Shown in pieces: positions 1,637-63,633 of a stretch of DNA of 64,000 nt. Within the stretch, counting starts at the first letter, position 1. Every line of letters begins with the position of its first letter. The notes below the pieces were generated by a model that was given only the letters and a program-made list of their open reading frames with translations, did not search any database and was not told where the DNA came from. The position numbers and the translations under genes were made by a program. The stretch is from contig NW_020843716.1 of NCBI RefSeq assembly GCF_003704095.1, positions 186,001 to 250,000 of the forward strand, written 5' to 3'. The stretch comes from Pocillopora damicornis (lineage: Eukaryota).

Positions 1637-2163
1637 CATGTCAAAATATTTGATATAAATAGAAAAATTCTGGCTGAAGAAGTGGTTAGGAAACCTGGAA
1701 AACCAACCACAAAGAAACAAAAAACGATGCTGTCGTTGTTGCAAGCTCTTAATGTTCACAAATGATGTTCACGTTGTTCTAAGACTACGTAAATCAATAA
1801 AACTTTCTGCTAGTCAGCCAGTTTAATATGATTGGAAAGCTGTTGAACAGTGCATCGCTAGATTCTTGTTCGGATAAATCTAAAAGTTGAGAGCTGAATC
1901 ATGTCAAAATATTTGTTATAAATAAAAAAATTCTGGCTGAAGAAATGGTTAGGAAACCTGGAAAACCAACCGCAAAGAAACAAAAAACAATGCTGTCGTT
2001 GTTGCAAGCTCTTAATGTTCACAAATGATGTTCACGTTGTTCTAAGACTACGTAAATCAATAAAACTTTCTGCTAGTCAGCCAGTTTAATATGATTGGAA
2101 AGCTGTTGAACAGTGCATCGCTAGATTCCTGTCCGGATAAATCTAAAAGCTGAGAGCTAGATC
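1637..2163. repeat. Direct tandem duplication, 2 x ~263 bp
   Basis: catgtcaaaatatttg... starts at 1637 and again at 1900; the copies are near-identical through ...gagagctg/tagatc. Confidence 0.95.
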
Positions 2164-3494: not shown

Positions 3495-3682
3495 NNNNNN
3501 NNNNNNNNNNNNNNNNNNNNNNNNNNNNNNNNNNNNNNNNNNNNNNNNNNNNNNNNNNNNNNNNNNNNNNNNNNNNNNNNNNNNNNNNNNNNNNNNNNNN
3601 NNNNNNNNNNNNNNNNNNNNNNNNNNNNNNNNNNNNNNNNNNNNNNNNNNNNNNNNNNNNNNNNNNNNNNNNNNNNNNNNNN
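3495..3682. other. Assembly gap (N run) following a poly-G tract
   Basis: Run of Ns; smaller 10-N gaps at 30396-30405, 47974-47983 and 56787-56796. Confidence 0.99.
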
Positions 3683-4214
3683 TCGCATGATGCTAAAATA
3701 CGGCGAGTGAAATACTGCAGCCAGAACCCAAGTTGAAGTTACCTTAAGACGACGTGTTTACTTGGAGATACTCCGATACGATGAGGATAAGCAACTGCTA
3801 AAAGCGCTCACTGGTGATTAATTTATAGCAAGCTTAAGGTTTAAACTGACGGCGATATATCGTCCAGGAAACTGCACATCTTGCGGAGGAAGCTTGCGAA
3901 CACTCCATCGACGAAGAAGGCGTAACACACCGTGACTTCCGTTGTAACGAGATGGGGAATTTCAATAACTGTCACAAGTAGGTCGGATGCAGCCCTGTTA
4001 GCTATGAGAAGCATAAGTTTTTCTTTCATTCTCACGTATGCGGTTATAAGAAGGAAATTTCCTATAGGCAATGCTAAGAGAGTGAGGATGAGTATCGCCA
4101 TGGTAACTTCAATCGGAACTACCCTGATGATACACATTTCAGATGAAGGGTGTCGTTGCTGTTTCCGATTTTCTCACCTTCAAGAATGGACGTGTTTCGT
4201 CTTGAAGCCATCAT
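3683..4214 (-). pseudogene. Class A GPCR pseudogene (N-terminus to TM4), paralog of the cluster genes
   Basis: ATG at 4214 gives MMASRRNTSILE...NDTLHLKC, then a frameshift into ORF 3841-4137 (GNFLLITAYVRMKEKLMLLIANRAASDLL...KMCSFLDDIS). Stops and frameshifts follow through the ERF-LAV-YP region and STWVLAAVFHSPYF, ending at the gap. Confidence 0.88.
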
Positions 4215-10816: not shown

Positions 10817-11971
10817 ATGGCGGTATTTAAAAATGTCTCGCTCCAAGGCAATGGCGAAACAACTGCAAGCAGCAATAGTACTCCTTCTCAAGAAGAGTGC
10901 TTTGGTCTTCCAACACAAGTTATTATCGCGTTACACGTTTTCACGCTCTTTGCATCCCTGATGGGAAATTCCCTTCTAATCACTGCTTTTGTTAGAATGA
11001 AAGAAAAAGTCATCCTAGTGATCGCTAACATGGCTGCATCAGACCTTCTGGTAGTAATCTTTCTACTTCCTCGCTTCATTGTAGCGGAGGCGCTCAGGTC
11101 TAATGTTTTTCTTATCCACGGAGGAGGGGGCACATTTTTGTGCAAGGTGTGCAGCTTCTTCAGCGACATGTCGTTGTCGGTGTCAACTCTAAGTTTGGTC
11201 GTGATCGCGGTTGAGCGCTTTCTAGCTGTGGTGTATCCTCTTCTGTATATGAAAACCTCTGGCAAGAGACGTCGTCTTCTCGTAGCTTCAACTTGGATCT
11301 TGGCCGCAGCATTTCACTTGCCGTACTTTTACACTTTTCGACTGGTGAGAGAAGTCGATAATCAAGGTTATGACTATCATGTCTGTCAATCAAGCTGGGA
11401 ACCAGCTTTCAATGACCAGTCTGCGCGTCGTCGCTACAACATCTTTCTCTATACAACCGTTTTGATTATACCATTGCTCGTTATTTCTGTTTTGCACATT
11501 ACTGTCGCTTTTCATCTTCGAAAGGACAAAATGAGTTCATGTCGAAACGAGAACGGAACAAAACGGATTCGAAAACGCACCCGGAGCCTACTCATGATGG
11601 CCATTTCTACTGTTACAGCATTTCTGATCTGTTGGACGCTCCAAATCGCTACAGCTTTCGTCTCCCTCTTTTCACCCGGGTTGTTTCGAAAGTGCAGCAA
11701 AATGCACACGGTCGTGTCTTCTCTCTCGCACATTTTGGCAAGTTGCTATTGCGCAATCAATCCCTGGATATGCCTCTTCTTAATTCCAAGGCTTTTTCGC
11801 GAATTGAAAATTATGGTGCATAGAAGAACATTTCGGCAGTATGCAATGAAGGGCCAAAAAATGGGGTCTGAGACCGAAAGTAGTAATGTCCGGCTTCGAT
11901 TTGAGAGTCGCACGTGTTCATTCGCACCCAATGGCGATAATCACGAAAAATCGACCGAAAGAAGTTACTGA
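10817..11971 (+). CDS. Orphan class A GPCR (neuropeptide-receptor-like), 384 aa
   Basis: Seven hydrophobic helices; TM1 GN, TM2 NMAASDL, TM3 C...ERF, TM4 W, TM6 FxxCW, TM7 NPWIC. Confidence 0.95.
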   Translation: MAVFKNVSLQGNGETTASSNSTPSQEECFGLPTQVIIALHVFTLFASLMGNSLLITAFVRMKEKVILVIANMAASDLLVVIFLLPRFIVAEALRSNVFLIHGGGGTFLCKVCSFFSDMSLSVSTLSLVVIAVERFLAVVYPLLYMKTSGKRRRLLVASTWILAAAFHLPYFYTFRLVREVDNQGYDYHVCQSSWEPAFNDQSARRRYNIFLYTTVLIIPLLVISVLHITVAFHLRKDKMSSCRNENGTKRIRKRTRSLLMMAISTVTAFLICWTLQIATAFVSLFSPGLFRKCSKMHTVVSSLSHILASCYCAINPWICLFLIPRLFRELKIMVHRRTFRQYAMKGQKMGSETESSNVRLRFESRTCSFAPNGDNHEKSTERSY

Positions 11972-16673: not shown

Positions 16674-17705
16674 TCATTTACAGAAGTTCTTTTTACAGAT
16701 TTTACTAAGCTCACGCGAAAAATTTCGAAGGAAAATTAGGCAAATACATGGATTAACTGCACAATATGAAGAGGCTAATATCCGCGAGATATATCGCATG
16801 ACTTTCTGTATCTTACTACACTCGGGAACCGGTCTTAGTGAAAAGAGGTCAAGGAAAGAAAAAACAACATAAGGAGTCCAACATATAAAAAGTGCCGTTA
16901 CAGTAACGGCGGCCATTCGGTGCAATTTTTTGATACGTTCTCGGTTTCGTCTTTTTCCCTTTTCGGTACGACTTTCAGCCAGTTTATCCTTGCGTGAGCC
17001 GCATACTACAATAGCCGATAGAACAGAGATTGTAAATAGTGGTATTAACAGTACTGTGGTGAATAAAAAAATATTGTAGCGAAGGTGCGCCGATTCGTCT
17101 TCAAAAGCTGGCTCCCAGGTAGGAATGCACAATTGGATCTTGCTGCCGTTGGAGTGGAACGGAATTAGGCGCATGATGTAAAAGTACGGTGCATGAATTG
17201 CTGCAGACGTGATCCACGTAGAAATGATTGCTCTCCAGCGTACATTGAGCGTGATTTTCTTATAGAGCATGGGATAAACAATCGCTAAGAGACGCTCAAC
17301 GAAGATTACGACCAGAGTCTGTGTCGATACCGCCAATGACATGTCACTAAGAAAAGTACACATCTTGCACAGAAATACGCCTCCACTTCCATGAACGAGA
17401 AAAGCGCTGGACCTGATGATTTCTCTTGTTATCACGCGTGGAATTAGAAAGATTGCCATTAACAAGTCAGACGCAGCCATGTTGACAATAAGAAGCATCA
17501 TAGAATCCTTCGCGCTTAAAAACGCAGTGATGAGGAAGGTGTTTCCAAGCAAGGCAACCAGCAGAGTGAGAACATGTATCACTATTGTAACTTGCTCTGG
17601 ACCTACAGGAGCTTCATCATCGGCACAAAGATTTTCTAAAAAGGTGTCGTTGCGGCTCGCATTTTGACTGTTTTCCAGACGATCTGCAGAGACGTTTGTA
17701 TTCAT
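16674..17705 (-). CDS. Orphan class A GPCR, 343 aa
   Basis: 7TM; GN, NMAASDL, ERL, CWTP, NPCIC; clear paralog of the other cluster members. Confidence 0.95.
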   Translation of the reverse strand: MNTNVSADRLENSQNASRNDTFLENLCADDEAPVGPEQVTIVIHVLTLLVALLGNTFLITAFLSAKDSMMLLIVNMAASDLLMAIFLIPRVITREIIRSSAFLVHGSGGVFLCKMCTFLSDMSLAVSTQTLVVIFVERLLAIVYPMLYKKITLNVRWRAIISTWITSAAIHAPYFYIMRLIPFHSNGSKIQLCIPTWEPAFEDESAHLRYNIFLFTTVLLIPLFTISVLSAIVVCGSRKDKLAESRTEKGKRRNRERIKKLHRMAAVTVTALFICWTPYVVFSFLDLFSLRPVPECSKIQKVMRYISRILASSYCAVNPCICLIFLRNFSRELSKICKKNFCK

Positions 17706-34102: not shown

Positions 34103-36569
34103 TACACTTGCTCTTTAATTTTAATAACAAATAAGTCTAGTGGAGCTAATCAGGCCACAAAATAAAATCAATGTCACCGAAGCGAATTGTTTGAAGATCT
34201 TTGAAATCGATTGAAGATCGATCGGTATTTCGAATTTTTGATTTCGGCTATATTTCCACAACTGCGTTTCGTAATGTTCAAGAAAAGAAATAGAAAATGT
34301 TGTTACATTGATTTCGAGAATAACCCGTCAGTTACATTTACACAAAACTTTGTTTCTATTTCTCTTTTCATTAAACAACTTCTTTTGCGAATGAGAGTTT
34401 CATTCCAGCTTCCGCGAGTTATCTAATCGGTAGGGAGTCAACGCTCGACGGGAAAGGGGGCAAGCCAATCAGATTGCCTGTGTTTTACGATAGTTTAGTG
34501 AGCATTTAACTAATTTAAAAGGTATAGAGCGCCAATGATCCCTGAAGACCGCAAATATCTTGAGTCATCCGCCTACGCCTGTCGGATCGTTTTTGCGAAC
34601 GTGACATTTAAGAAAACGCCCGAACACTGCTATTTTTAACTTAAACTTTGCCTCAGTTACTCGACTGGAGCGAGGTCTCCTGTCAAACCCAGTTTCTGAA
34701 AGTATCTTGCTCGGCATACGTGCTCAAACTCCCTTGCTTCCCTCTGTCCGAGGGTTTCTGTAAGTCGTGAATATAGCATACACAATATGTGAGCAATATG
34801 AATGAAATTTCATGAAAATTTAGTCTAACTAAAATTGTTAAAGATTTGCTTTTCAAGTTGGCCTAAATCAATTCAGGCTCAACTCCGTCCAATTTTCCCT
34901 ATATACATCCTGTCATAGTTTTCCTCGGCTGTTGTCTATTTAATATTACCATCTTTTAAATTCCTTATTTTAGGATTGTAAATTATCAGTTCATATTCCC
35001 TTTGACCTGCATTTGACAGGTAGTTGAAGAAATAGCGTAATTACTCGATGAAACGCAGCGGTGTTAATCAATAGTTTAGCGTTTTGATGCGGCCTCTACT
35101 CAAAATACGTTTTCATTTCTTAGACCATGAAAAATATCTCTATAATTTACTCGTTAATCATGACCATGCCGCACTACAAAAACATGGTTAAAGTTGCAGT
35201 ATCCTACTCTTTATTTTATTGAAATGAAATACACTTATTTATGCACTTGGGTCAGATGCAAAGTAATTTCCTCGTTACGTTTCATGAGTAATACGTACGG
35301 CACATGAGACGAAGTTCTGCTTGCTGTCACAGTGAAATACCGGAAGACGAGGGCGATTAAGAGAGACTTCCTAATTCCCCTTCTTCTCTCCACCTGGGAA
35401 TCTCCACGCAATTTTTGAAACATTGTATTGTTTAGCTGGCCATACAGTTTGGTAAAACAAGTTGCATCAGAATTAAAGAAACTTATTTGAATCATGATTA
35501 TTAACAGGAATGACAGCTATCAATGGGTCCACTTACCCCCCGACCATCTATACACGGTTTATTGCAAAGTGCGACAAGAGTGGTTACAAAATGCGATAGC
35601 TTTCGGCGTGATGGTCGCAGTGTGCGACAGTTTTTTTTTCTTATAAAGTGCGATAAGTGTTTACAAAGGGAAAATGTTATTACAGAGAGCGACAGAAAAT
35701 ATCTTGAAGTGAGGCCAAGACTTACGGCAAGCCGGCCGCTTTCAATTAAAACAGTATCGAATGACCACAAGAGAACACGAGTGATCGTGATATGTCTGGA
35801 GACTTTAGTACTGTCTTTGTTTCTATACACGCTATAAAGATAACGGGCTCGTATTTATGATAGAAATAACTCATTACTTCGAACTCAGAACGGTCACCAG
35901 TTAGCGATCGGGTTAAGATATATAATATAAGATATATAAGCGGGTTAAGATATATAAACACGGTAAGCTTTTTAGCCATCTTTCAAAAACCGTTAGAACA
36001 GACATTGCCACAGGGGTCGTCGCTGTGTCCGCTTTGTATGACATAGCGGAGTGATATGAATTCAGGTGTAACAGCATGATTTGTTCTCAATCTATCGCAG
36101 AAGTTGAAGTTAAGAACTTTTTGAGTCTTATCTCTCAAGGTACATGTGAGTGCCTTAGTCTTACTGCCTCCTAGGCATGAGTCGTTAAAAGCGTTCAATG
36201 ACTCTGATTAACAAGTGTTACATAATTTGGTGGCGTCATTTCCTCTCAAGGACGTCACGCAGACTACTTAACTAAGTAGTGTAAATGAGTCTCCTGTATT
36301 ATTTATAGTCACATCTTTTTCTTGAGTTATTAACGGAGAAAGGACCCATTTAACTTAAGCTCTTTATTGGAATTCGTAGGATTGGCCACCTTTCTGATGT
36401 GTTGAAAGTAACTCAAGACACAAGGGAACGATTTAAGGGCCATAGAAGCTGCAAATGCTCCATAATAATCCTTTGTTAGAGTTCGTAGCTACGGACGCTG
36501 CGGTGAAACCATCCTAGTGTGACCTATGACGGGAGGAATATTTCATTCCCTCTAAAGACGGAGCGAAGA

Positions 36570-37547
36570 ATGCTTGGAAACAATTCCTCAACGATTTTGC
36601 ATCGACCTGGTTCAGACAGCAATGAGACAAAGTGTGCTGCTTTCACGGTTGGACTAGTTGAAGTTTATATCACAATCCATTTTGTCACTATTCTGGTGTC
36701 CTTGGTGGGAAACATTCTTCTGATTATTTCCTATGTGAGAATGAAGGAAACGTTAATGCTCCCTATCGCCAACATGGCTGTATCTGACCTGCTGACTACA
36801 CTTTTTCTAATGCCTCGTCTTCTTAGACGAGAGCTCACCGGATCCAACGATTTCCTCATTCGTGGAGTTACAGGTACATTACTGTGCAAACTATGCTCCT
36901 TCCTAAGCGACATATCGCTATCTGTGTCGACCCAGAGCTTAGTACTCATAGCTGCTGAGCGATTTCTCGCGATTGCTTGTCCAATTTTATATAGGAAGGT
37001 AATGACGGTGAAAAGACGCTATCTCTTCGTAGGCTTAACATGGATAATATCCATGGGAATTCATTCGCCATACTTTTACGCTTTCCGTCTGTCTACTAAT
37101 AATATTTGTGAAATGAACTGGGAACCAGCTTTCGATCATAAGTCGACGCAGCCACGCTACGTGCTTTTTCTTTTCGTAACAGTTTTGCTTCTACCGTTAA
37201 TTACTATCTCTGTGCTTTACTGCATTTTCGGCGTCAAGATTCGGCGAGATAAAGTAGCTTCGTCTCGAACCGAGAGAGGGACCTTGAGACACCAGGAACG
37301 CAGCAGAAAGTTACAAAGAATGGGAATAGCTACTGTAACGGCGTTCTTAATCTGTTGGCTCCTTTATATAGTGATAAATGTTTTCAAAGAGCTTTCTTCA
37401 AATACTGATCATGAGTGTAGCCAAGGTTTTAAGATAGTAGACAATATATCTCGCGTTTTAGCAAGCTGTTACTCTGCTGTAAATCCCTGTATTTGCTTTA
37501 TATTTGTGAAAAGCTTTTCTCGTCAACTTTTCGCGTTATGCAGATGA
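36570..37547 (+). CDS. Orphan class A GPCR, ~325 aa from ATG 36570, C-tail truncated
   Basis: 7TM; NMAVSDL, ERF, CWLL, NPCIC; the ORF-track start at 36519 is a GTG; closest paralog is 43575-44729. Confidence 0.92.
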   Translation: MLGNNSSTILHRPGSDSNETKCAAFTVGLVEVYITIHFVTILVSLVGNILLIISYVRMKETLMLPIANMAVSDLLTTLFLMPRLLRRELTGSNDFLIRGVTGTLLCKLCSFLSDISLSVSTQSLVLIAAERFLAIACPILYRKVMTVKRRYLFVGLTWIISMGIHSPYFYAFRLSTNNICEMNWEPAFDHKSTQPRYVLFLFVTVLLLPLITISVLYCIFGVKIRRDKVASSRTERGTLRHQERSRKLQRMGIATVTAFLICWLLYIVINVFKELSSNTDHECSQGFKIVDNISRVLASCYSAVNPCICFIFVKSFSRQLFALCR

Positions 37548-43574: not shown

Positions 43575-44729
43575 ATGATTTCTTCAAACGCAAACAACAT
43601 ATCCGTGGTTTTGGACCATGCTGGTTCGGACAGAAATGATACTTCTACGCCAACAAAATGTGCCGCTTTCACTGTTGGACCCATGGAAATTTATGTCACA
43701 ATACATGTTCTCACTCTTTTAGTGTCCTTGGTGGGAAACATTCTTATCATTGCTGCTTATGTGAGAATGAAGGAAAATATTTTGCTCCCTATCGCCAACA
43801 TGGCTGCATCTGATCTGCTGACTGCACTCTTTCTAATGCCTCGCCTTTTAACAAGAGAGTTCACTCGATCCAACGTTTTCCTCGTTCGAGGAGGTACAGG
43901 TACATTTCTGTGCAAGATGTGTACTTTTCTAAGCGACGTATCGTTGTCTGTGTCGACCCAGAGCGTATTGCTTATAGCCACTGAACGATTCCTTGCTATT
44001 GTTTATCCACTTCTGTATAAGAAGGTGTTCACGGTGAAAAGACGCTATCTCTTCGTCGCTTTAACATGGATAGCTTCCATGGCGATTCATTCGCCATACT
44101 TTTACATTTTCCGTCTGTCTGCCGATAACACGTGTCAACCCAACTGGGAACCAGCTTTTGATCATGAGTCGACGCAGCCACGCTACCTGATCTTTCTATT
44201 CATAACAGTTTTGTTTTTACCGCTGCTTTCTATTTCTGTGCTTTATGGTATTATCCATGTTAAACTTCAGAGAGATAAATTGGCTTCGTCTCGAACTGAG
44301 AGAGGGGCTGTAAGACATCAAGAACGCAGCAGGAAGTTACAAAGGATGGGAATAGCTACTATCATTGCGTTCTTACTTTGCTGGACGCTTTATATTGGAA
44401 TAAGTGTTTTCAAACTATTTTCCCCAAATGCTCAACAGAATTGTAATATAGGTTTCAGGATGGTTGATCATATTTCTCGAGTTTTGGTAAGCTGCTATCC
44501 TGCGGTAAATGCGAGCATTTGCTTCATTTTCGTACAGGGCTTTACTCAGCAGCTTATAGGTATGTGTAGACGAAAACGCCAACCATCAGTCACTACTGAA
44601 ATAGTACAAGATTGGTCTGCGGAGAACAACTGCAGTCGCATACGATCTGAATCAGCGCAAACATTGAGCTCGTTACTGATCACGAGAAACGGGAACAATT
44701 GCTCACTCGTTGATTCCCATCTAGTCTAA
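43575..44729 (+). CDS. Orphan class A GPCR, 384 aa
   Basis: 7TM; NMAASDL, ERF, CWTL, TM7 NASIC. Confidence 0.95.
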   Translation: MISSNANNISVVLDHAGSDRNDTSTPTKCAAFTVGPMEIYVTIHVLTLLVSLVGNILIIAAYVRMKENILLPIANMAASDLLTALFLMPRLLTREFTRSNVFLVRGGTGTFLCKMCTFLSDVSLSVSTQSVLLIATERFLAIVYPLLYKKVFTVKRRYLFVALTWIASMAIHSPYFYIFRLSADNTCQPNWEPAFDHESTQPRYLIFLFITVLFLPLLSISVLYGIIHVKLQRDKLASSRTERGAVRHQERSRKLQRMGIATIIAFLLCWTLYIGISVFKLFSPNAQQNCNIGFRMVDHISRVLVSCYPAVNASICFIFVQGFTQQLIGMCRRKRQPSVTTEIVQDWSAENNCSRIRSESAQTLSSLLITRNGNNCSLVDSHLV

Positions 44730-46067: not shown

Positions 46068-47168
46068 TCAAATAATATGCGTGGGCAGCTTTTTCCTATA
46101 TCGTCGCATTTTACCCCCATTTGTATCGCGTTGATGGTTCCGTTTGCACATTGCACTCAATTCGCGAGAAAAGACTTTTAGGAACATAAAACAAATACAA
46201 GGATTAACAGCGCAGTAAGAGGTTACTAACACCCGAGATATAAAATAAATTATTTGAAACGTTTCGCTGCATTCAGGAACTGACGTAGGTGAAAAAAGCT
46301 GCAGAAAAGTAATAACAACAAAGAGCGTCCAACATGTCAAAAACGCTGTTAAAGTAGCTGTGACCATCTTTTTTAAATTATTGTTACGTTCATATTTTCT
46401 GCGAGCTCTATTTTCACTCAGACCTGTCACCATTTTGTCAACCCTCCGAAGCTTAATCATCGTCGTAAGGCACAAGATTGCCACCACAAGGAGGGGTATA
46501 AATACAACTGTAACGTATAAAAAGGTGACATAGTGTAATTGAGCTGATCCATTGCTAAAGGCGGGTTCCCAGCTTGGCACACAAAACAAGGTTCCTGTGC
46601 CATTTTGTTTTTTATGTGTAATCAGTCGAAAAATGTAGAAATAGGGCGAGTGCAATGCCATGGCCAGGATCCACGTGACGGCAATGAGCACATAGCGAGT
46701 TCTCACGGTGACTTTCCTGTACAAGAAAGGATACACTACAGCCAAGAAGCGCTCCGCGGCGATCAATATCAAGTTCTGTGTTGATACCGACAGAGACACG
46801 TCACTCAAGAAAGTGGACATCTTACAGAGAAGTAGTCCTCCTAATCCGTGAACAAGGAAGGCGTTGGATCTGGTGATTTCTCTTGTTATCAAGCGAGGGA
46901 TCAGAAAAACTCCGACAAATAGATCAGAGGCCGCCATGTTGGCAATAAAGACAGCGATCTTTTGTTTCATTCTTGCGAACGCAAGTATAAGAAGTGTGTT
47001 TCCTGCTAGAGCAATTAACAACGTAGAAACATGTATTAAAACCATTGTTACTTGTATCGGACTCATGTTTACTCCAAGTTTTTCGCAATTTTCTTGTGGA
47101 GAAGTTGTGGTGTTGTGGAAACCTCCAACGTCCAAATTATCAGAGGAAACATTTACTCCGAGAGCCAT
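46068..47168 (-). CDS. Orphan class A GPCR, 366 aa
   Basis: 7TM; NMAASDL, ERF, CWTL, NPCIC. Confidence 0.95.
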   Translation of the reverse strand: MALGVNVSSDNLDVGGFHNTTTSPQENCEKLGVNMSPIQVTMVLIHVSTLLIALAGNTLLILAFARMKQKIAVFIANMAASDLFVGVFLIPRLITREITRSNAFLVHGLGGLLLCKMSTFLSDVSLSVSTQNLILIAAERFLAVVYPFLYRKVTVRTRYVLIAVTWILAMALHSPYFYIFRLITHKKQNGTGTLFCVPSWEPAFSNGSAQLHYVTFLYVTVVFIPLLVVAILCLTTMIKLRRVDKMVTGLSENRARRKYERNNNLKKMVTATLTAFLTCWTLFVVITFLQLFSPTSVPECSETFQIIYFISRVLVTSYCAVNPCICFMFLKVFSRELSAMCKRNHQRDTNGGKMRRYRKKLPTHII

Positions 47169-53535: not shown

Positions 53536-53853
53536 TTACATTAAGGCCTCATTATATTAAGAGTTTGTCACTAATTTTCGACTACATATGCTTGTCACGT
53601 GCAGTTGAATGTAGTTACTTGGCAGACGGAGGAGGAAAAGGTTATCAATATTTATGCAGTTTGTCAATACGATTGCACAAGGACAAGCATCGTCTGACAG
53701 AAAGACCAACAGCGTCATTACTGGTTATTTCGGTAAGGTGAATACTGAAGCATGCACTCTTTGATCTATGGATGAATTAGGCATTTCGGCCAGAAAAATA
53801 CTTCCTTAAGTTCCATGTTTTCTCTGCTTTTTTTCAGGCTTTGTGATCAAGTT

Positions 53854-54966
53854 ATGAATTCAAGTACACAATTCGCTTTAGAGGCTTCGAAGGCTGTGAA
53901 TGCCAGCGACAACAGTACCCTTACTCTGGAAAGTTGTGGTATTGTATTTCCAAATGAGATGATAATCACTATACACTTTTTGACGCTCTTTACGTCCTTG
54001 ATAGGAAACACTCTCCTCATCGTTGCATTTCTGAGAATGAAAGAAACGATACTGCTCCTCATTGCCAACATGGCTGCATCTGACCTACTCTTAGCGCTGG
54101 TTCTTATGCCTGAATATATTATATATGAACTAACTGGGTCCTTCGAATACCACGTTCGTGGTGGTGTAGGTACTTTTCTGTGTAAGATCTGCCCTGTTCT
54201 AAGCGACGCATCATTGTCAGTATCAACCCAAAGCTTAGTCTTGATCGCAGTCGAACGGTTACTGGCACTAATGGCTCCTGTACTCTATAGGAGGATAACC
54301 GATAGTAAACGGAGGATTATCGTCATCTGCACTTGGATTGTGGCCATACTTCTTCACTCGCCCTATTTCTACGCGATGCGACTAGCTTCGATCCATCACG
54401 AAGGTACCTTTATCCAAGTTTGTTATCTAGACTGGGCACCAATTTTTGAACACAGAACAGCACAACTTCGTTATGGTATTTTTTTATACATAACCGTTTT
54501 AATTGTACCTATTCTTGTAATTTCTGTGCTTTACGCTGTAATCGTTTTCAACCAACGAAATGACAAAATGGGCTCCAGTCGAGGTGAAAAGTGTGCAATA
54601 CGAAAGAAACGAAGCGTCAAGAATTTAAAACGGATGGCTGTAGCTACAGTAACGGCACTATTTTTATGCTGGACGCTTTATATCATAGTGTTTACATTCA
54701 AACTTGTCTCTCCAGAGACAGTTCCCAAATGTAGTAAATTTTTCCAAGCGGTGGAAAATGTGTCTAACTTGATAGCAAGCTGTTATTGTGCAGTTAATCC
54801 CTCCCTTTGTTTCATTTTCATCAAAAGTTTTTCGCGTCAGCTAAGTTTTTTGTGTCAACGAAAATCTAATCGACAGCGTGGCGCGAAGTGTACTCACGCG
54901 AATGTCAAAATGGGAGAATCTGGTTCTGTCAGCTGTCTGACGAGATTAAGTTTACGTGGCAGTTAA
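53854..54966 (+). CDS. Orphan class A GPCR, ~370 aa from ATG 53854 (probable 5'UTR intron 53733-53837)
   Basis: 7TM; NMAASDL, ERL, CWTL, NPSLC. The ORF-track ATG at 53815 lies just before a pyrimidine tract ending ttttcag (53837), with a donor gtaag at 53733. Confidence 0.93.
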   Translation: MNSSTQFALEASKAVNASDNSTLTLESCGIVFPNEMIITIHFLTLFTSLIGNTLLIVAFLRMKETILLLIANMAASDLLLALVLMPEYIIYELTGSFEYHVRGGVGTFLCKICPVLSDASLSVSTQSLVLIAVERLLALMAPVLYRRITDSKRRIIVICTWIVAILLHSPYFYAMRLASIHHEGTFIQVCYLDWAPIFEHRTAQLRYGIFLYITVLIVPILVISVLYAVIVFNQRNDKMGSSRGEKCAIRKKRSVKNLKRMAVATVTALFLCWTLYIIVFTFKLVSPETVPKCSKFFQAVENVSNLIASCYCAVNPSLCFIFIKSFSRQLSFLCQRKSNRQRGAKCTHANVKMGESGSVSCLTRLSLRGS

Positions 54967-57472
54967 ACTAAATAATCCTTATCAATAGCTCTGTCAAAAC
55001 AAACTGAAATGTGATATTAAAGAAGGAAAAAACAAGAAGGTGAAACATAAATTTATTATGCTTGAATTGTATATCGCCCTCAGGCAAAGCGACTTTTGTA
55101 TCTTGGTTATTATTCGACTGAAACTTTCCCTTTTGTTAAGCCTCTTCGTTTTCTTGATACTTGGCACAATATTATGGAAAGGAAAAAAGGTATATCTCCA
55201 ATCTATTTGCATAGGAAATGTTGCCCACATAAAAATCATAATATATCAAGGAAATTCTAGTCAAAGAGACCCCCGGAACACCTGCGGTGTTAATGGAAAT
55301 GTGTCTAGTTAACATTTAAGTGTGAAACGTACGTATGGAGTTTTAATTTCCCAGTGATTGTCGTTAAGATTATTTTGTTTCAAAATAAGTACGTTAAAAG
55401 TACAAAGTGTCAAAAATGTATCTCATTGACTTCCGTTAGAAGTCAGGTTTCGAATATCCTCGTCACTTGTCGACCACTGGCCCCTCGGCATATGGTAAGT
55501 AAGATGGCCTCTTTTACTCGAAATATGACTGAGAAGTTTAACATCAGGCAAGGTGAGATAGCCGGTGCAGTTCAGGCCTTTGATATTAGTTCATCCAGCT
55601 ATTTGTCAGAGGTAAACCACTTAATGTGCTTCCATATACTGCGATAAAGTCCATTACTTGATATCTAAGATTAAACAGCATCAAGCATAAATGGCATAAC
55701 TTACTTGGTATGGAAATGTTCACTTCATTGTTCCGGAAGCCAAGTTGTGAGGCTTTGTTATTAAAGAGCTGATTGAGATTTTAAGAAAGGAGTCGATTTT
55801 GGAGCAGACGATTTGGAAATCTCTGACGCTGCTTTCTCTATCTTTTGGCGGGATAGTTTAGCCCCTTCATGATCACATTGCGCTTACTCACGAGTCCTTT
55901 AAAAGGCTTTATATTGCTAAAGATCGTTGCAATGAGGAGAGGATGATATTCAGTACTTTTTTTTTTGTTCAATTTGAACAGAAAGCTAATACTATGTTTT
56001 GGGAGCGAAATTGATTTTTGCATTAAATTTTAGCCTGAAACTAAATGTATACTAAATCAAAAAGGAATAAATTAGACATATCAATCACATTTACTTTCGA
56101 CTTTTGCCAGCTTTTGGTGTCAACCTTTGCAGTTTTCGCTTTTGAATTCTTCATGGAGTGGAATTACCAATAATTTCCCATGGAATAACACAAATGCGGC
56201 AGCGAAATCTAACCACGTAGAGAAATATTGATTATATTTTCCCTACCGTGTCTTATTTGTGTGCATTCATTGTAGGCGTCTTAATAAGCAGGCTATAGAT
56301 GGCTTACTCTGAGACAGGAAAAAGAATCTGCGGCGAACGCCATGGACTGTTCATTTTTCTTACAGTGCTGTGTGAAACGTATAGTTTGAGGGTAGAAAAA
56401 ACCATCACACTTTTGGTCACTCTCTTTTTTTACTTCTGCGTTAAGTACAAGAAGATAATTGAAAGGAGAAATTTGAATTATGTTATTTTCACTTTTATCT
56501 TCCGCCTTTCTCCATTTCTAAGTTGGAGAAAAATTCAAATGTTGTTTTTCTTGAATTATCAGCCGTACTGGCTGTTGATTCCTTTTTATTAATCTTATCA
56601 ACTTCTACTTGTTATTACTATAAGATCTTAACTATAATCAGTCTTTCAATTGAATATATTTAACTGCCACTCTTATGTCAAACTGCTATTTCCTGTCGCC
56701 TTTTTTAAAGGATCATAGAAACATTAATTAGCTTTATTGGGAGAGGGGGAAGGGGAAGTCGAGTAAAAATTTATAGTGACACAGCCNNNNNNNNNNCCCC
56801 CTCCACAAGGCGATAAGTAATGCAGGTCCCTTGTTCTTTGCAGCCAATCGATCTTGAAGGAATATATTTAATGATTCAAAATGTAGACTTTTGATGACAT
56901 TACCCATAATCCTTTAGCGTTGCAGTTTATGCTGGAAGAGAGCTGTGTTGTAAAGCATTAGCTGATTACATTCTTGATTGTATTGTTTTCGTGTGTTCTC
57001 GATTGATTTTGGCGGATTACACTTCAAGTTGTTAAAATTCTTGGCTAGTTTACATTCTCTGGCGTCTCGTGAGATTGTTTGTTGTAATAGATCTTAAGAA
57101 CAATTATATTGTGTCTAAAATTTTTTTTTCAGGACTACCAGTATATCAACAGTTGTTGCTGAAACTTGACCAAAATTTAACTGTCAAACTTCTATCGGTT
57201 ATCAGTGTTCATTAAACAAAAACAGATTACGGAAATCGACACCCCTTATTCATACCGCTGTAAGCGTGCCCACCACATCGGATACATTATACGTTAGTGT
57301 GAAATAGGGTTTATTGATCATGACAAGAGAATACAATCTTTTGTTCGTGATTATTCTAGGCAGTAGATGAACGAGAAAACTCATACAAAAGGAGAGAAAT
57401 TTATAATATTTCCTGTCGCAAAAATAAAACTGAAAACTATCACAAATGACATGACTGTGCTTCCTTTCCATT

Positions 57473-59567
57473 TTAGACCGAGGATCCTTTCTCCTTATTC
57501 TTTGGCTGAATTATTTTTAGTATTCCTTGGACTAACAGCTGTGCAATTTCGTTATCATCCGGATGCTTCCCAGGCCGCTGACTTTGCTCTGATGCAGCCT
57601 CTTTAGATCGGTTATCGTCAGATGCTACATCATCTGCACGATCTGCCTTGTCATCTTCCTTTTCACCAGATTTCGAATCGTTAAAGTTTCCTTTTTCCTT
57701 GACTGGTTTTCTCAAAGAGATCGGAAAATCTTCGTTTCCAATACTCAATGTGGCCTCACCATCAGGAAAATTAGCTGGAAATTCTATTGCAAAATCTCGT
57801 TGTGCAAAACTTAGTGCAACGCATAGATCGTGGGTCTCTTTGTCTCTGCTTGTACCAGTTACTTGAAATTTCCCCTGGAGAGCGCCATGGATCTTTCCAA
57901 AAAGGTCCATGCCTTCTTTCACCGAGTACCATTGCTCTCTTTTTGTTTCGGCCTGTTGCGATGAAGTTGAAGTCCAGCGAAACTCGCCCGTTACCAGATC
58001 ATTGTGATATTTCTTTTGTGTTCCACTGAAAGGATTACTGAGGCGGAAAGCGCTGTCTTTCGGCAGTACCTCTGTGAAAATAAATCATAGAATGTTTACA
58101 ATAATTGGAAGAACAGATGAGTAAATAATCCAAGTGTAGGTTCTTAACTAACCGTATTTTGAAAGCATCCTGAGTCTTAGAAATATTCAACATAGCACTG
58201 AAAATCTAACGTTGCAATTACCTGAGAGCCACTACAGGGCAATGGCTTTTGCTGAAAACGATTAAAATTTTGGCCATTTTACAGCTGACGGCTAATGAAT
58301 TTCTGTTAAGTTAACAAAATAATTTTACTTATTTACGCCTGACGGCTCAATTATTTTGCTGCTTTACAACAAGACCCTCTTTTTTAAACAACCACGAAAC
58401 AGTTAATACGCGGTAAAACCGTCATTTGCGCCTAAAATTCTCATTATCGTAATTTCATTACTGTTATTTTCCCCCTATGGAGATATGAAAATAGCTAATC
58501 TTTCGATTATGCCTTGACGGGGAAGGGAGAGCGTTGCAAGACAAGACGAAACATGATCCTGCTCAGCAGTATGTTAAAAAGAAAAATTTATACGACTGAT
58601 AGGGGGAATCTAATCTTGCCAAGTTTCCCATTATTGCAAGGTCCTGTGTTTGGTGGAAATCATGATAACGAGGGCGCGTGTGTGCACCGATTCATGAATA
58701 ATTATTGTAGTAAATACTCTAACGGCGACTGGTTCCCCAATTTTTTAAAATAAACAATCGAATATTTAAGGATATTACCGAGTATTCCCTTCAATGAAGC
58801 TTCCTTTTCAACGACACAAACTTGCTTCACGTCCAGTGTTTCGTTGTCCACACCAACCTTCATATATACAAAGCAGGGCTTTCCTTCACCTAGGTTTACA
58901 CCTTAAACAAAATATATGAATCATCATGAACTAAACAAAATGAGACCTCGCAGTGAACTTTTCACTACCTGCAGAACTTAAGTGGCTATATAGTTACTCT
59001 TCTTGGCCAAAAGCTAACTCAATTTGATGGACAAGACATCTATTGCTTAACAATTGTTCATTTTAAGTAGAGGGAAGGGGTGAGTGAGTATTCTATTTCG
59101 TTTGCCTCCAGTTCTAGGAAATTGATTCTGTAGTCAGGCCTCGTTTATATTTCACAATCGTATAGTCAAATTTCATTTGCTTCGATAAATTTTGAAATAT
59201 TCAACAAGGCGAACCACCCTCCCAAAAAATTAAATTAAAGACGAAACAAACCGAGCGAAAGTGGTACTAGTAGTTGACTTTAGCACATAGAATAAAATAG
59301 ACACTGTTACTTCCCCTAATAGGACACTGAATTTCGTTTCTTACCGCCAGATTCTTTTGTGCTCCATATCCCAACGCGTCGAAGAGCATGGGGTTTGAAC
59401 AACTCTTCTTCATCTTCGTCCTTAAGACTACCAGTGATATACTGCACGACTGGCTGATTTGAATGAGTCCACAGACCAAACAGATGTCCGCTCTCAATCC
59501 GTTTTTCTACAACATGTTGCTTAATCTGCCTAAGTTCACCCTCGTGGATTGTCACTGTCAGACTCAT
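57473..59567 (-). CDS. 3-exon gene, ~310 aa: N-terminal degenerate JAB/MPN-like domain + E2/RWD-like domain + acidic tail (exons 59567-59345, 58889-58779, 58071-57473)
   Basis: Canonical GT-AG introns, both phase 1 (G|gtaag, tag|GT, G|gtaat, cacag|AG), join into a 933-nt stop-free frame: MSLTVTIHEGELRQI...ESGHLFGLWTHSNQPVVQYITG...VGIWST...CFVYMKV...LKGILEVLPKDSAFR...QWYSVKEGMDLFGKI...IEFPANFP... An alternative in-frame exon 2 acceptor lies 12 nt upstream. Confidence 0.8.
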
Positions 59568-59696
59568 CTTGGCTCGTACTGTCAACCGAAAAATATCAGT
59601 AAATAAGTCGCAATACCGAAGCAGCTTGGTGCGATCAGAGCAAAATGTTTTTCACTTTTTATTGTGATGAGCTTTTTCATGGGCCGTAAATAACAT

Positions 59697-59751
59697 TTCT
59701 AAGAAATCGTGACGTCATGTGATACTCTGAGCCTACCGGTTTTTCCCGGAA
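59697..59751. promoter_or_regulatory. Putative promoter cluster: GAS TTCTAAGAA (59697-59705), CRE TGACGTCA (59710-59717), GAS TTCCCGGAA (59743-59751)
   Basis: Exact consensus matches 130-185 bp upstream of the JAB-like ATG. Confidence 0.55.
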
Positions 59752-60027
59752 ATGTTTACATGTCAGTTAAGGATATTCAGATTTTATTAAAGTGAGTATA
59801 TGTAACGAGAGTTAATGGTTCCATGACAAATACCAGCTAGAGAAGAAATGGAATGAAAAACCAAAGAAATCAGTCACAGTGTCATAAATTCACAAATCCT
59901 ATTTTCTCCGCCTGAGCTTGTTGAATCAACTCTTCGTCAAAGCTGTATGAAAATCGCAAAAATTTCGATCGGCTCTTGCGAAGTTTTGAAATAATAATGC
60001 ATCTTATTTGACGGAAAGTGCGAGCTA

Positions 60028-60038
60028 TTTCGGTTTCC
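60028..60038. promoter_or_regulatory. ISRE/IRF-type motif TTTCGGTTTCC in the divergent intergenic region
   Basis: Matches GAAANNGAAA on the minus strand. Confidence 0.4.
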
Positions 60039-61035
60039 AAATACAGCCACGACTATCGCTCGGTCCCGAAAGTGTGTAGGATTAATAATTGCTCTGGCGA
60101 ATCACGTTTTTGCGGTTAAATTTTGCTGTTGTCCTGTCTTTCTAACCTGCGTAAACGAAATGATTTGGGTTCTAGGAAAAAGGCTTGGACGAATCAACAT
60201 TTAACATGGCAATCTTAATTACGAGCCACAAAAGTTGTACAAAGCGAAAGTCTTTAAATCTGCCTTCCCACTTCCCAAATCCCTGCCAAAAGATTATTCT
60301 AAAAGCAATTTCGAAGCTAAGAGGTATGACATAGTGCTTGCTTAATATGGAGCAGCGAATGAACTCGCTAAATAAGCAAACCGGTTTATCCAATATCTTA
60401 AAACTTTACATTAACTGCGTCTATAACAATTTACAATTTGTCATCAAACATTTCTTTAGAGTGGGATTAGAGAGCTCAATGACAACTAGTGTCAACTGCA
60501 TAATAATCTTAGGATCTTTTATTTTTGTCTAACAAAAATATATACATTAAAGACGTATCAGTTCGTAGATTTAGGTTAATAGAATATTAAGTCGATCAAT
60601 CTTTGGAATTTTTCCTTGTGTCCTACTACAGTTAAGGGGCGATATTAATAGCAGGGACCCTATAATTTTGAAAGCAGCATTTCTCTCAGAGGTTCGATTA
60701 TATTGAGGGAATTGAAGGCATGACATTTAAATGTTGTCATGAAAAAAGGATTGAATTGATAAATGTAGTTTATGTACATGAAAAGTACATAGACAGACGA
60801 AATTATGTGACCTTACATGGTAGTGCAGCCCTGCTCGGGGTGGACATGACGTAGCGAAATTGCTCGAGGCATTTTATTTCCTCAAATTGCTTTCTTTGCG
60901 CATGAGCGCATCATTCCTAATTCAAAAAACAATATTTAATGTTAACAACTATACCTCCCTCACTTAAACTGGAGAATCATTGCTGTGCACATCCTATCAA
61001 GAGAACAGAACAGCTAAAACAACCAACTTGAAGTG

Positions 61036-61485
61036 ATGCCCTGGTCACAGGCCCAGAGACAGAGGCTCGGCTTTGAGAAAACGTTGCTGGAGAGCTATTT
61101 TCGTGACAGAGTGACATGGATTAGTCCCGGAGACCAAACGATAGTGGAAGTTCGAGCTACATGCACCAACGACAGACAGTACACGCTGAGGATTTATCTG
61201 CCAACTGATTTCCCCAATTCCTGTCCCAACATGGTTGTCAAGGCATCGGCTAGATTGAGGGCGCGTAACGGAGATCTTCTAGAGTGCTATCCAGGAGACA
61301 ACCACATCGGGAAAACCGTAGAAGGCTACACAGGCATCTGCCATTTCAGGCCAAATAGATGGAGGAACGATAATACTTTGTATCAGGTGACGATGAAGGG
61401 TCTGATATGGCTGGAAGCTTATGAGGCGCATCTTCGCACCGGCCAACCCTTGAGCCAATTTTTGACCGATATGCCAGATCGTTAA
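61036..61485 (+). CDS. Non-canonical E2/UBC-fold protein, paralog 1 (149 aa), putative catalytic Cys102
   Basis: UBC-like pattern in order: QRLGFEK helix, YTLRIYLPTDFPNSCP, NH...G..GICH, W...NTLYQV; ~58% identical to paralog 2 by manual alignment. Confidence 0.85.
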   Translation: MPWSQAQRQRLGFEKTLLESYFRDRVTWISPGDQTIVEVRATCTNDRQYTLRIYLPTDFPNSCPNMVVKASARLRARNGDLLECYPGDNHIGKTVEGYTGICHFRPNRWRNDNTLYQVTMKGLIWLEAYEAHLRTGQPLSQFLTDMPDR

Positions 61486-63087: not shown

Positions 63088-63189
63088 AAGCGGTTCGAAA
63101 ATAGTTGTCCGCAGCATTTGAATTTAGCGAGTGTTCCTCGTTTGAAACCTGTACAGACAAACTAAAAGTTGCTTTTATCTTTCTTCAAA

Positions 63190-63633
63190 ATGTCATGGTC
63201 AGCAACTCAGCAAAAAAGGCTTGGATTAGAGAAAAATATTCTCGAGAAGTACTTCGGTAACAGAGTTTCATGGATCAATCCGACTGGCGATACGAAGGTT
63301 GAAGTAAGAGTGACAACCACCAGTGATAAACAGTATACACTCAGGGTGTATCTTCCTGGAGATTTCCCAAATTCATGTCCACAGATGATAGTCAGTAATC
63401 CTTCGTCCTGTCTAAGAGCGAAAGACGGTTCTTCGCTGAGCGGAATGAGTGGGATTAACCATACATTAGGCAGTATAGATGGTTGCACTCAGATCTGCCA
63501 TTTTAACTCGTCCTTGTGGAAAGATAACAACACACTGTACCAAGTGGTTATGAAAGGGCTGATATGGCTGGAGGGGTACGAAGCACATCTTCGCACCGGG
63601 CAACCTATAAATAAATACTTGCAAGAGATGTAA
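63190..63633 (+). CDS. Non-canonical E2/UBC-fold protein, paralog 2 (147 aa), putative catalytic Cys103
   Basis: KRLGLEK, YTLRVYLPGDFPNSCP, NHTLGSIDGCTQICHF, WKDNNTLYQV, MKGLIWLEGYEAHLRTG; ATG in aaaATGt context. Confidence 0.87.
   Translation: MSWSATQQKRLGLEKNILEKYFGNRVSWINPTGDTKVEVRVTTTSDKQYTLRVYLPGDFPNSCPQMIVSNPSSCLRAKDGSSLSGMSGINHTLGSIDGCTQICHFNSSLWKDNNTLYQVVMKGLIWLEGYEAHLRTGQPINKYLQEM

What the first reader, a model, noticed from the sequence alone, without database searches (positions are those of the whole stretch)
57473..59567. Hidden 3-exon gene: apparent double pseudo-enzyme (dead JAB + Cys-less E2/RWD)
Seen: splicing joins ORF fragments 59316-59585 and 57473-57922 through an unlisted 111-nt exon into ~310 aa. 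The N-terminus has the JAB/MPN pattern (strand-helix, E.G.LFG.W, VVQYITG, VG.W), but the Zn-binding HxH...SxxD is replaced by WSTKESGG. The second domain (QWYS..EG..LF..I...L...SRD..T.DL......IEFPANFP) has the RWD/UBC FPxxF/YP turn but no downstream catalytic Cys. Inference: a non-catalytic adaptor, decoy or regulator of the adjacent E2 enzymes. Its introns show it is a domesticated nuclear gene.
Basis: partly seen in the sequence, partly recalled or inferred. Interest (0 to 1): 0.75.

Follow-up and report, generated by a model that had tools for sequence, protein, structure and literature searches.

The report
Dead JAB protease gene in coral
A spliced, expressed coral gene encodes a bacterial-type JAB protease domain that has lost its metal-binding catalytic residues, joined to a little-known domain that resembles the front half of a ubiquitin-conjugating enzyme, so it probably regulates protein tagging rather than performing it.

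Summary
The gene is real. RNA contigs from 4 of 4 runs show it spliced. The first is 12 nt off: exon 2 is 58901-58779, 123 nt, not 111. An untranslated 5' exon ending at 60955, beside the first E2 gene, was missed. The CDS is 314 codons with one stop, at the end.

The N-terminal domain is homologous to intact Cap3-like JAB genes of the same genome (BLASTP 4e-8; hhalign 98.8%, E 7.7e-17). It lacks both zinc-binding His and the Asp, as do all 9 family members examined.

The C-terminal "QWY...FPxNFP" domain has no Pfam model. It defines a family of 145 clusters whose named members are all anthozoan. It occurs with active JAB, dead JAB, kinase and Death domains. Its likeness to E2/RWD is only moderately supported (hhalign P 1.9e-4, 0 of 200 shuffles).

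Most likely it is a non-catalytic MPN-minus adaptor or regulator in the coral's bacterial-type E1/E2/JAB kit. That function is untested. Earlier notes of this scan flagged the same kit at other loci of this genome.

The parts
60955..60986 (-). 3' end of an untranslated 5' exon. The transcription start is not mapped and lies at or above 60986, within or beside E2a.
   Evidence: Contigs of X6 and X12 leave the stretch at 59580. Their 30 loose letters map once, with 1 mismatch, to 60957-60986. The GT donor is at 60954-60953.
59579..60954 (-). Intron in the 5' UTR, 1376 nt, GT-AG
59345..59578 (-). First coding exon. ATG at 59567. Encodes residues 1-74 plus the first base of codon 75. An in-frame TGA lies 12 codons upstream in the spliced 5' UTR.
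58902..59344 (-). Intron 1, 443 nt, phase 1, GT-AG
   Evidence: Joint 58899->59343 (cut +2) in 4 of 4 runs; dinucleotides.
58779..58901 (-). Coding exon 2, 123 nt.
58072..58778 (-). Intron 2, 707 nt, phase 1, GT-AG
   Evidence: Joint 58071->58779 in X12 and X1.
57473..58071 (-). Coding exon 3, ending with stop TAA at 57475-57473
57300..57472 (-). 3' UTR, reaching at least here. AATAAA lies at 57315-57310; the transcript end is not mapped.
   Evidence: Contigs cover 57300-58072 at exon depth; sequence.
58040..59567 (-). Span encoding the MPN-minus (dead JAB) domain, residues 1 to about 126 up to the DSAFRL motif. It is interrupted by introns 1 and 2.
   Evidence: stored Atlas model of homolog P0023
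57707..57946 (-). QWY domain (QWY...SRDxxTHD...FPxNFP), possibly E2/RWD-like, with no conserved Cys
57476..57706 (-). Charged low-complexity stretch followed by a conserved C-terminal segment (DxxxIAQLLVQGI...) that ends in G-S-S-V
   Evidence: Alignments. Its likeness to the helix that closes the QWY repeats of L003 is judged by eye.
61033..61485 (+). Neighbouring bacterial-type E2 paralog E2a, head to head with this gene
63169..63633 (+). Neighbouring E2 paralog E2b. A third copy lies just past the window at C351:254080-254520.

Best explanation
This is an expressed nuclear gene of a stony coral with four exons, three of them coding. It encodes a 314-aa protein with two modules.

(1) MPN-minus domain. 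It descends from the Cap3-like (CBASS-type, Prok-JAB) isopeptidases that anthozoans carry beside bacterial-type E2 and E1 genes. The two zinc-binding His and the Asp are gone. The catalytic Glu is not conserved in the family. It cannot be a JAMM metalloprotease.

(2) QWY domain of about 95 residues. It probably has the fold of the front half of an E2/RWD domain (helix, beta-meander, FPxxFP flap) and has no catalytic Cys. A charged linker and a conserved C-terminal helix follow it.

SHOWN: splicing, expression, homology of the first module, loss of the catalytic residues, the family's spread across Anthozoa, and linkage to E2 genes.

INFERRED: the protein works without catalysis inside the E1/E2/JAB conjugation kit. 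Either it pairs with an active JAB paralog, as MPN-minus partners do with MPN-plus enzymes, or it holds conjugates or E2 through the QWY module. It would then tune or read tagging rather than remove tags.
For: SPLICING AND EXPRESSION. Joints with GT-AG ends appear in RNA contigs of 4 of 4 runs. Exon depth is 150-2100 against 5-30 in introns. There is one stop in 315 codons.

FIRST MODULE.
- Exon 1 against own-genome JAB ORF L011:1453-2193: E 4e-8, 38% over 50 aa. That ORF passes the Pfam Prok-JAB cut-off, 28.4 against 25 bits.
- Family N-domain against 26 active JABs: hhalign 98.8%, E 7.7e-17, 130 columns.
- Exon 1 frame against an active-JAB HMM: 2e-8.
- Stored Atlas model of homolog P0023: aligned over residues 1-127 to a 145-aa Prok-JAB peptidase, TM 0.67 by that row.

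LOSS OF CATALYSIS. Of 61 JAB-bearing sequences, 24 have E/H/H/S/D and 35 lack both His. The 35 include 9 of 9 members of this family.

AGE. The family sits in a 14-member dead clade (SH-aLRT 100) that includes a sea anemone (Actinia) and an octocoral (Dendronephthya) protein.

THE KIT. Active paralogs hit PADLOC CBASS JAB models at 3.5e-16, and the E1 hits E1-E2 models at 5.7e-32.

LINKAGE.
- This locus holds dead JAB-QWY plus three E2 genes.
- C687 holds E2, JABs and an E1.
- C3576 holds kinase-QWYx4 plus two active JABs.
- Five family hits share a contig length with an E2-family hit in other assemblies.

QWY DOMAIN. hhalign against the E2 family gives P 1.9e-4 over 60 columns; 0 of 200 shuffles reach it.

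PRECEDENT. MPN-minus partners are essential for BRCC36 activity (abstract of PMC4579573, seen in the listing).
Against: - The only model is a stored one of a homolog with mean pLDDT 0.58.
- The E2/RWD likeness of QWY is weak. Probability is 47.6% against E2. Only 16 columns align against RWD. PDB hits to UBE2D2 have E 0.83 and 1.9. Pfam RWD is hit in 1 of 87 and 1 of 34 members, below threshold.
- Column shuffling is a lenient control.
- Pfam, PADLOC and NCBIfam give no hit for the family itself.
- Between this genome and a 95-99% identical form in three runs, the listed CDS differences are 17 non-synonymous to 4 synonymous, pN/pS about 1.2. The list is truncated. That could mean relaxed constraint.
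- No interaction, zinc or activity data exist.
Confidence: 0.6

Rival explanations
1. QWY is not an E2/RWD derivative. It is a separate adaptor module, used like Death or CARD domains for homotypic or heterotypic assembly. It wires JAB enzymes, kinases and Death-domain proteins into anthozoan immune signalling complexes. The dead JAB-QWY protein would then be a scaffold or a dominant-negative competitor in those assemblies, with no direct link to E2.
For: - QWY occurs in 1-4 tandem copies with active JAB, dead JAB, a protein kinase (Pkinase 1.2e-29), a Death domain (1.1e-11), TPR and coiled coils.
- It has no Pfam model.
- Its sequence links to E2/RWD stay below the usual thresholds.
Against: - The best profile match of QWY is the neighbouring E2 family. 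It runs in the right order from helix 1 to the flap: score 27.0, against 13.5 for a JAB control and a maximum of 18.7 in 200 shuffles.
- Both QWY genes of this genome lie beside kit genes.
Confidence: 0.25
2. The gene is a decaying paralog. It is transcribed and spliced but functionless, having lost catalysis and now drifting.
For: - pN/pS is about 1.2 on the 21 listed CDS differences.
- No hit to any curated family.
Against: - The frame is intact at 314 codons, and homologs are intact in Montipora, Oculina and others.
- The dead clade includes anemone and octocoral members, so it has been kept since early anthozoan history.
- About 28 positions are invariant or nearly invariant among 27 homologs.
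- Exon depth is high in poly-A RNA.
Confidence: 0.08
3. The protein is still an enzyme. It would cleave or transfer a tag with other residues, for example the conserved His of GLWTHS and HxLR(H/R)xG.
For: - Some His residues are conserved near the former active site.
- In this species a Glu lies one residue out of register with the catalytic Glu.
Against: - The HxH pair is deleted along with 7 residues, and the Asp is V here.
- That Glu is not conserved even in the 60%-identical P0002.
- No JAMM enzyme without these ligands is known to me (recalled, not searched).
Confidence: 0.04

Closest known systems
Cap3 / Prok-JAB (PF14464): JAB isopeptidases of CBASS type II and related bacterial E1/E2/JAB systems
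   Same: The N-terminal domain is homologous to own-genome JABs. Those JABs hit PADLOC CBASS JAB models (3.5e-16) and Pfam Prok-JAB. Like Cap3, the gene sits beside E2-type genes.
   Different: The Glu, both His and the Asp of the JAMM site are lost. The gene has introns and carries a C-terminal QWY domain. The family itself hits no JAB model. No CD-NTase/Mab-21 gene lies on C351 or C687, among 51 matches in the genome.
MPN-minus pseudo-deubiquitinases (Abraxas and KIAA0157/ABRO1 with BRCC36; Rpn8 and CSN6 recalled)
   Same: An MPN domain without zinc ligands coexists with active MPN-plus paralogs. Such partners are essential for BRCC36 activity (abstract of PMC4579573, listing).
   Different: The origin is independent, from the bacterial-type JAB branch. 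No heterodimer has been shown here. In BRISC the pseudo-E2 (UEV) domains are on a separate subunit, BRE (recalled). Here both modules are on one chain.
UEV / RWD / UBC-like non-catalytic E2-fold domains
   Same: The order helix, beta-strands, FPxxFP flap is shared, and there is no catalytic Cys. Weak profile links: E2 family P 1.9e-4, coral RWD P 7.8e-4, UBE2D2 E 0.83.
   Different: QWY is shorter (about 95 aa) and has its own QWY...SRDxxTHD signature. It passes no curated threshold. The fold has not been verified.
Active JAB-QWY proteins of anthozoans (e.g. P0156, P0157, P0165, P0192 of Dendronephthya)
   Same: They share the architecture: JAB, ESPFR-type linker, then QWY.
   Different: They keep E...HSHH...PSxGD and often carry a CxCxxC motif after QWY. 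This family has lost the site and has a charged insert before the last helix.

Membership tests
JAB/MPN superfamily (fold-level homology) | Sequence or profile homology to bona fide JAB domains across the whole domain | tested here: met
   hhalign 98.8%, E 7.7e-17, 130 columns against 26 active JABs. BLASTP 4e-8 for exon 1 alone. Active-JAB HMM 2e-8.
JAB/MPN superfamily (fold-level homology) | MPN fold in a structure or model | tested here: inconclusive
   Only the stored Atlas model of homolog P0023 was available (pLDDT 0.58).
JAMM/MPN-plus metalloisopeptidase (Cap3, Prok-JAB PF14464) | Catalytic motif E ... HxH ... S ... D | tested here: not met
   The aligned columns read S/K/E/P, S, then E/D/G/A/K/Q, then gaps, in 9 of 9 family members. 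24 of 61 JABs read EHHSD. The window has WSTKESGG-V.
JAMM/MPN-plus metalloisopeptidase (Cap3, Prok-JAB PF14464) | Score above the Pfam gathering threshold or a PADLOC JAB model | tested here: not met
   No family hit at E<=10 for exon 1 or for P0002 and P0018. Only unrelated hits at E 0.29-3.2 for P0004, P0009 and P0023. No PADLOC or NCBIfam hit for P0002; no PADLOC hit for P0023.
E2 / UBC (PF00179) catalytic enzymes | Catalytic Cys after the flap, and an HPN-type motif | tested here: not met
   There is no Cys after FPANFP in the window. No conserved Cys column in 34 or 188 domain copies.
E2 / RWD / UEV fold (non-catalytic) | Significant profile or curated-model match | tested here: inconclusive
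   Against the E2 family: probability 47.6%, P 1.9e-4. Against RWD: probability 25%, 16 columns. Pfam RWD in 1 of 87 members (0.0028) and 1 of 34 (0.12); UBC_like in 1 of 34 (0.063). UBE2D2 E 0.83.
E2 / RWD / UEV fold (non-catalytic) | Alpha/beta core of helix 1 plus a four-stranded meander plus the flap, seen in a structure | not testable with these tools
The Atlas holds no model of a QWY-only protein.
CBASS type II-like operon context | JAB next to E1/E2 (Cap2) and a CD-NTase | tested here: inconclusive
   E2 genes are adjacent here, and the E1 with E2 and JABs lies on C687. No Mab-21 match on C351 or C687. Three lie on C3576, about 670 kb from the JAB/QWY locus.

The most novel reading that the evidence does not exclude
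Anthozoans turned a bacterial Cap2/Cap3-like conjugation kit into an immune signalling network. They invented a new reader module, QWY, from the front half of the kit's own E2. They also evolved, independently of the BRCC36-Abraxas and Rpn11-Rpn8 pairs, an obligate MPN-minus partner. This gene is that partner. It would dock on an active Cap3-like JAB and use QWY to select which tagged proteins are deconjugated. It would be co-regulated with E2a from a shared bidirectional promoter.
Probability: 0.25. Interest if true: 0.8.

Novelty: new variant of a known kind. Interest (0 to 1): 0.62.

Why it matters
Bacterial E1/E2/JAB systems such as CBASS Cap2/Cap3 are seen as relatives of eukaryotic ubiquitin signalling. 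How such kits behave once inside an animal genome is unknown. Here a coral has kept the enzymes. It also has a long-lived, expressed pseudo-enzyme branch and a companion domain that Pfam lacks. That domain joins proteases, kinases and Death domains. If the dead JAB-QWY protein proves to be a regulatory partner of the active JABs or E2s, it would be an independent re-invention of the MPN-plus/MPN-minus logic of the proteasome, COP9 and BRISC. It would also give a handle on a cnidarian immune pathway that nobody has described. Six literature searches found no account of it.

Tried and rejected
LED NOWHERE.
- Pfam on the three exon products at E<=10 gave nothing. On the full-length homologs it gave only unrelated hits at E 0.29-3.2.
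- PDB profile search with the whole-family alignment gave only DENR at E 0.41.
- Pfam on 34 QWY copies gave noise, with single UBC_like and RWD hits.
- The first hhalign, with a shallow QWY profile, gave probability 7%. A profile of 188 copies superseded it.
- The Atlas feature search with JAB families left out gave no usable hit.
- Mab-21/cGLR genes are not next to the kit loci.
- Literature searches and passages of PMC8195603 gave no description of a JAB-QWY family. Only the passages around my search terms were read, not the whole papers.
- PMC4878875 lists a "thif family protein" as a bacterial transfer into Anthozoa (passage seen). I could not check that it is the E1 on C687. Its supplements were not asked for (the session brief said they are closed) and might settle that.

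REJECTED.
- A prokaryotic contaminant: the gene has introns and the contig carries animal receptor-like genes.
- A chance ORF chain: RNA joints and collinear homologs speak against it.
- An N-terminal extension: an in-frame TGA lies 12 codons upstream.

NOT DONE.
- The joined three-exon protein was never built for, or sent to, any search. Exons were searched apart.
- Exon 2 was checked only by Pfam and alignment. Exon 1 was not sent to the large protein databases.
- The third homologous-protein search was left unused.
- About 7 of the 145 hits (P0155, P0168, P0179, P0228, P0233, P0239, P0261) look by eye like unrelated repeat proteins. I did not remove them from the count of 145.
- The 61 JAB sequences were picked by a motif pattern from 163 proteins. 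The other 102 lack an N-terminal JAB motif or are truncated, and were not examined.
- The tree is the quick tree. The careful search did not finish.
Full report
WHAT IS THERE. The window is part of contig C351 of a 234-Mb coral assembly. Its GC content is about 38%. On the minus strand between 59567 and 57473 lie three open pieces whose translations I read separately.

RNA EVIDENCE. I laid Logan contigs of four RNA runs, from four studies by their codes (P3, P5, P2, P1), on 57300-59700.
That is GT..AG on the gene's strand. It is seen in X12 and X1. In X6 and X5 contigs end exactly at those two places.
- All four runs join 59345 to 58901, the listed 58899->59343 joint read with the cut two places on.
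- Exon 2 is therefore 58901-58779, 123 nt. The extra four residues bring the protein to the length of the homologs P0002 and P0003.
- Word depth is about 150-2100 on exons and 5-30 on introns.
- Contigs of X6 and X12 leave the genome at 59580. Their next 30 letters map once, with one mismatch, to 60957-60986. With the two shared letters this gives a third GT-AG intron, 59579-60954, and an untranslated 5' exon that ends 78 nt before the start codon of the neighbouring E2a ORF.
- In that spliced leader an in-frame TGA lies 12 codons before the ATG.
- Read codon by codon, the coding sequence has 314 codons and one stop, at the end.
- One X6 unitig of 1452 nt abuts this junction. I could not see where the rest of it lies, so the transcription start, and a possible antisense overlap with E2a, stay open.

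HOMOLOGS.
- The exon 3 product finds 27 proteins. They include full-length proteins of 299-345 aa from Montipora capricornis and M. foliosa. An Oculina patagonica model of 310 aa is misannotated: it has a spurious N-terminal extension and is cut off inside the QWY domain.
- Two 315-aa proteins sit on 1.4-1.6-kb contigs, too short to hold the introns seen here.
- All these proteins align collinearly with exon 1, exon 2 and exon 3.
- The M. foliosa isoform X2 lacks exactly the exon 2 equivalent. That suggests the intron positions are old.
- In the coral's own genome exon 1 is single-copy.

THE FIRST DOMAIN.
- A search of the own genome with Pfam Prok-JAB finds an intronless 247-aa ORF on contig C687. 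It passes the family's cut-off, 28.4 against 25 bits. It carries E-TGG...HSHH...PSGGD.
- Exon 1 alone matches that ORF at E 4e-8, 38% over 50 residues.
- A profile of 8 family N-domains matches a profile of 26 active JABs at 98.8% probability, E 7.7e-17, over 130 columns up to the shared (E/D)S(P/A)FR motif.
- In that alignment the active "GEWHSHHxLxLxxPSxGD" faces "G(I/N)WST...ESGG(D)" with a 7-residue deletion.
- I picked 61 JAB-bearing sequences by motif from 163 proteins. Of these, 24 read E/H/H/S/D, two nearly so, and 35 lack both His. The 35 include all 9 members of this family.
- In this coral the Asp position is Val, the first residue added by the corrected exon 2.
- A Glu lies one residue out of register with the catalytic Glu. 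It is not kept in P0002.
- The ESM Atlas holds a model of homolog P0023 with pLDDT 0.58. Its nearest structures are Prok-JAB (TM 0.67 by row over residues 1-127), EMC8/9, BRCC36 and Rpn11/eIF3F. By the tool's own warning this is a lead only.
- My own structure prediction was not possible.

ORIGIN OF THE FIRST DOMAIN. The active paralogs hit PADLOC's CBASS JAB (Cap3) models at 3.5e-16. The 429-aa ThiF-type ORF on C687 hits the E1-E2 (Cap2) models at 5.7e-32. The domain is therefore a dead descendant of a bacterial-type, Cap3-like JAB.

AGE OF THE DEAD BRANCH. A quick maximum-likelihood tree (the careful search did not finish) puts the family in a clade with SH-aLRT 99. That clade lies inside a 14-member dead clade (100), which contains an Actinia tenebrosa protein and a Dendronephthya gigantea protein. 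A second dead clade of 21 lies elsewhere. Two inactivations are likely, though the starred branches alone do not exclude one.

THE SECOND DOMAIN.
- Exon 3 also matches, weakly, a 483-aa ORF on contig C3576. That ORF consists of four repeats of the same unit (QWY...SRxKDTHD...FPxNFP...helix) and follows a protein-kinase ORF.
- A profile of the five copies, run against 1.84 billion representatives, finds 145 clusters at E<=0.001 and 57 at E<=1e-10. About seven look by eye like unrelated repeat proteins.
- The unit occurs after active JABs, after dead JABs of several kinds, after kinases, with a Death domain, with TPR repeats and with coiled coils. It is often followed by CxCxxC.
- Every member that carries an organism name is anthozoan and "uncharacterized" or mis-named.
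- Pfam has no model for it.

IS QWY E2-LIKE? A profile of 188 copies matches the neighbouring E2 family with probability 47.6%, P 1.9e-4, score 27.0. The match covers 60 columns running from helix 1 through the strands to the FPxxFP flap.
- Controls: none of 200 column shuffles reaches that score (maximum 18.7). A JAB control scores 13.5. The reversed profile scores 10.0. Column shuffling is a lenient control.
- Against eight RWD domains of the same coral the match is P 7.8e-4 but covers only 16 columns at the flap. The E2 family itself matches RWD at 87.9%.
- A PDB profile search gives UBE2D2 at E 0.83 and 1.9.
- No column holds a conserved Cys.

I read this as about 60% for an E2/RWD-like half-fold. 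It is not shown.

CONTEXT.
- The gene lies head to head with E2a (61033-61485). E2b follows it, and a third copy lies just past the window.
- C687 holds an E2 head to head with a JAB, a second JAB, the E1 and a further JAB frame.
- C3576 holds kinase-QWYx4 followed by two active JABs.
- Both QWY genes of this genome therefore sit beside kit genes (one search found no third QWY gene).
- In other assemblies, five family hits share their contig length with an E2-family hit: 1,471,221; 232,159; 66,795; 527,559; and an Oculina chromosome. This hints at conserved linkage.

SELECTION. Three runs carry a form 95-99% identical to this genome. Of the 21 coding differences listed, 17 change the residue, giving pN/pS about 1.2. 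The list is truncated. This fits either fast, immune-type evolution or relaxed constraint. The intact frame and the family's spread across Anthozoa argue against decay.

MECHANISM. Shown: the gene is expressed and spliced, the protein has an MPN-minus domain of Cap3-like descent, the JAMM site is lost, a Cys-less companion domain is present, and the gene is linked to E2 genes. Inferred: a non-catalytic role in the kit. It could be a partner of an active JAB, as Abraxas and KIAA0157 are for BRCC36 (abstract of PMC4579573 in the listing). Or it could be a reader or decoy for conjugates or E2 through QWY. The main rival is that QWY is a separate assembly module unrelated to E2.

NOVELTY. Six literature searches and the passages read found no description of this family. 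Earlier notes of this scan had flagged the kit on this window and on C3576. I checked their gene content in part. I could not find the "tag peptide" they mention.

Noticed in passing
window 10817-11971(+), 16674-17705(-), 36519-37547(+), 43575-44729(+), 46068-47168(-), 53815-54966(+): Six intronless ORFs of 342-384 aa are clearly paralogous to one another (shared NMAASDL...ERFLA...NP motifs). By eye they look like class-A G-protein-coupled receptors in a tandem cluster. No family search was run on them.
   Followed up: no
L016 (G000:C687:97000-106999) 2106-3218(+): The second active JAB on C687 (370 aa) has a repetitive acidic tail and ends in CCKCCSVM. By eye this looks like a CaaX or palmitoylation-type lipid anchor signal. 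It would put a Cap3-like protease on a membrane.
   Followed up: no
L041 (G000:C3576:4900-14899) 3030-5744(+): An active JAB of 904 aa carries about 15 near-identical repeats of roughly 36 residues (GEEGTAKTATSDS.EDNDSHGSQADDP.KGKS) after the catalytic domain.
   Followed up: no
family C-termini; window 57476-57487: The family ends in a conserved G-(S/T)-x-V carboxy terminus: GSSV here, and GTDV, GTYV, GTMV, GTSV in others. This fits the class I PDZ-binding pattern (recalled). Other dead JAB-QWY subfamilies end differently.
   Followed up: no
window 59551-59580 and 60955 onward: A 1452-nt RNA unitig of run X6 (depth 75) touches the stretch only with its last 30 letters, at the 5' splice junction. 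If it is collinear with the genome it would run antisense through the whole E2a ORF. The first exon may therefore overlap E2a, or the two genes share overlapping 5' ends.
   Followed up: partly
P0311, P0313, P0312: In Montipora capricornis a dead JAB-QWY protein and a kinase-QWYx2 protein have consecutive accession numbers. In M. foliosa they are annotated as one 850-aa fusion. The two genes are probably adjacent or co-transcribed there.
   Followed up: no
L016 8971-9999(+) (G000:C687:105971-106999): A further open frame at the edge of the fetched stretch has two matches to the active-JAB profile (1.3e-34). It may be a tandem-JAB gene downstream of the E1.
   Followed up: no
G000, 51 places: The genome holds at least 51 Mab-21 (cGAS-like) matches, with a cluster of nine on contig C2558. 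None lies on C351 or C687.
   Followed up: no
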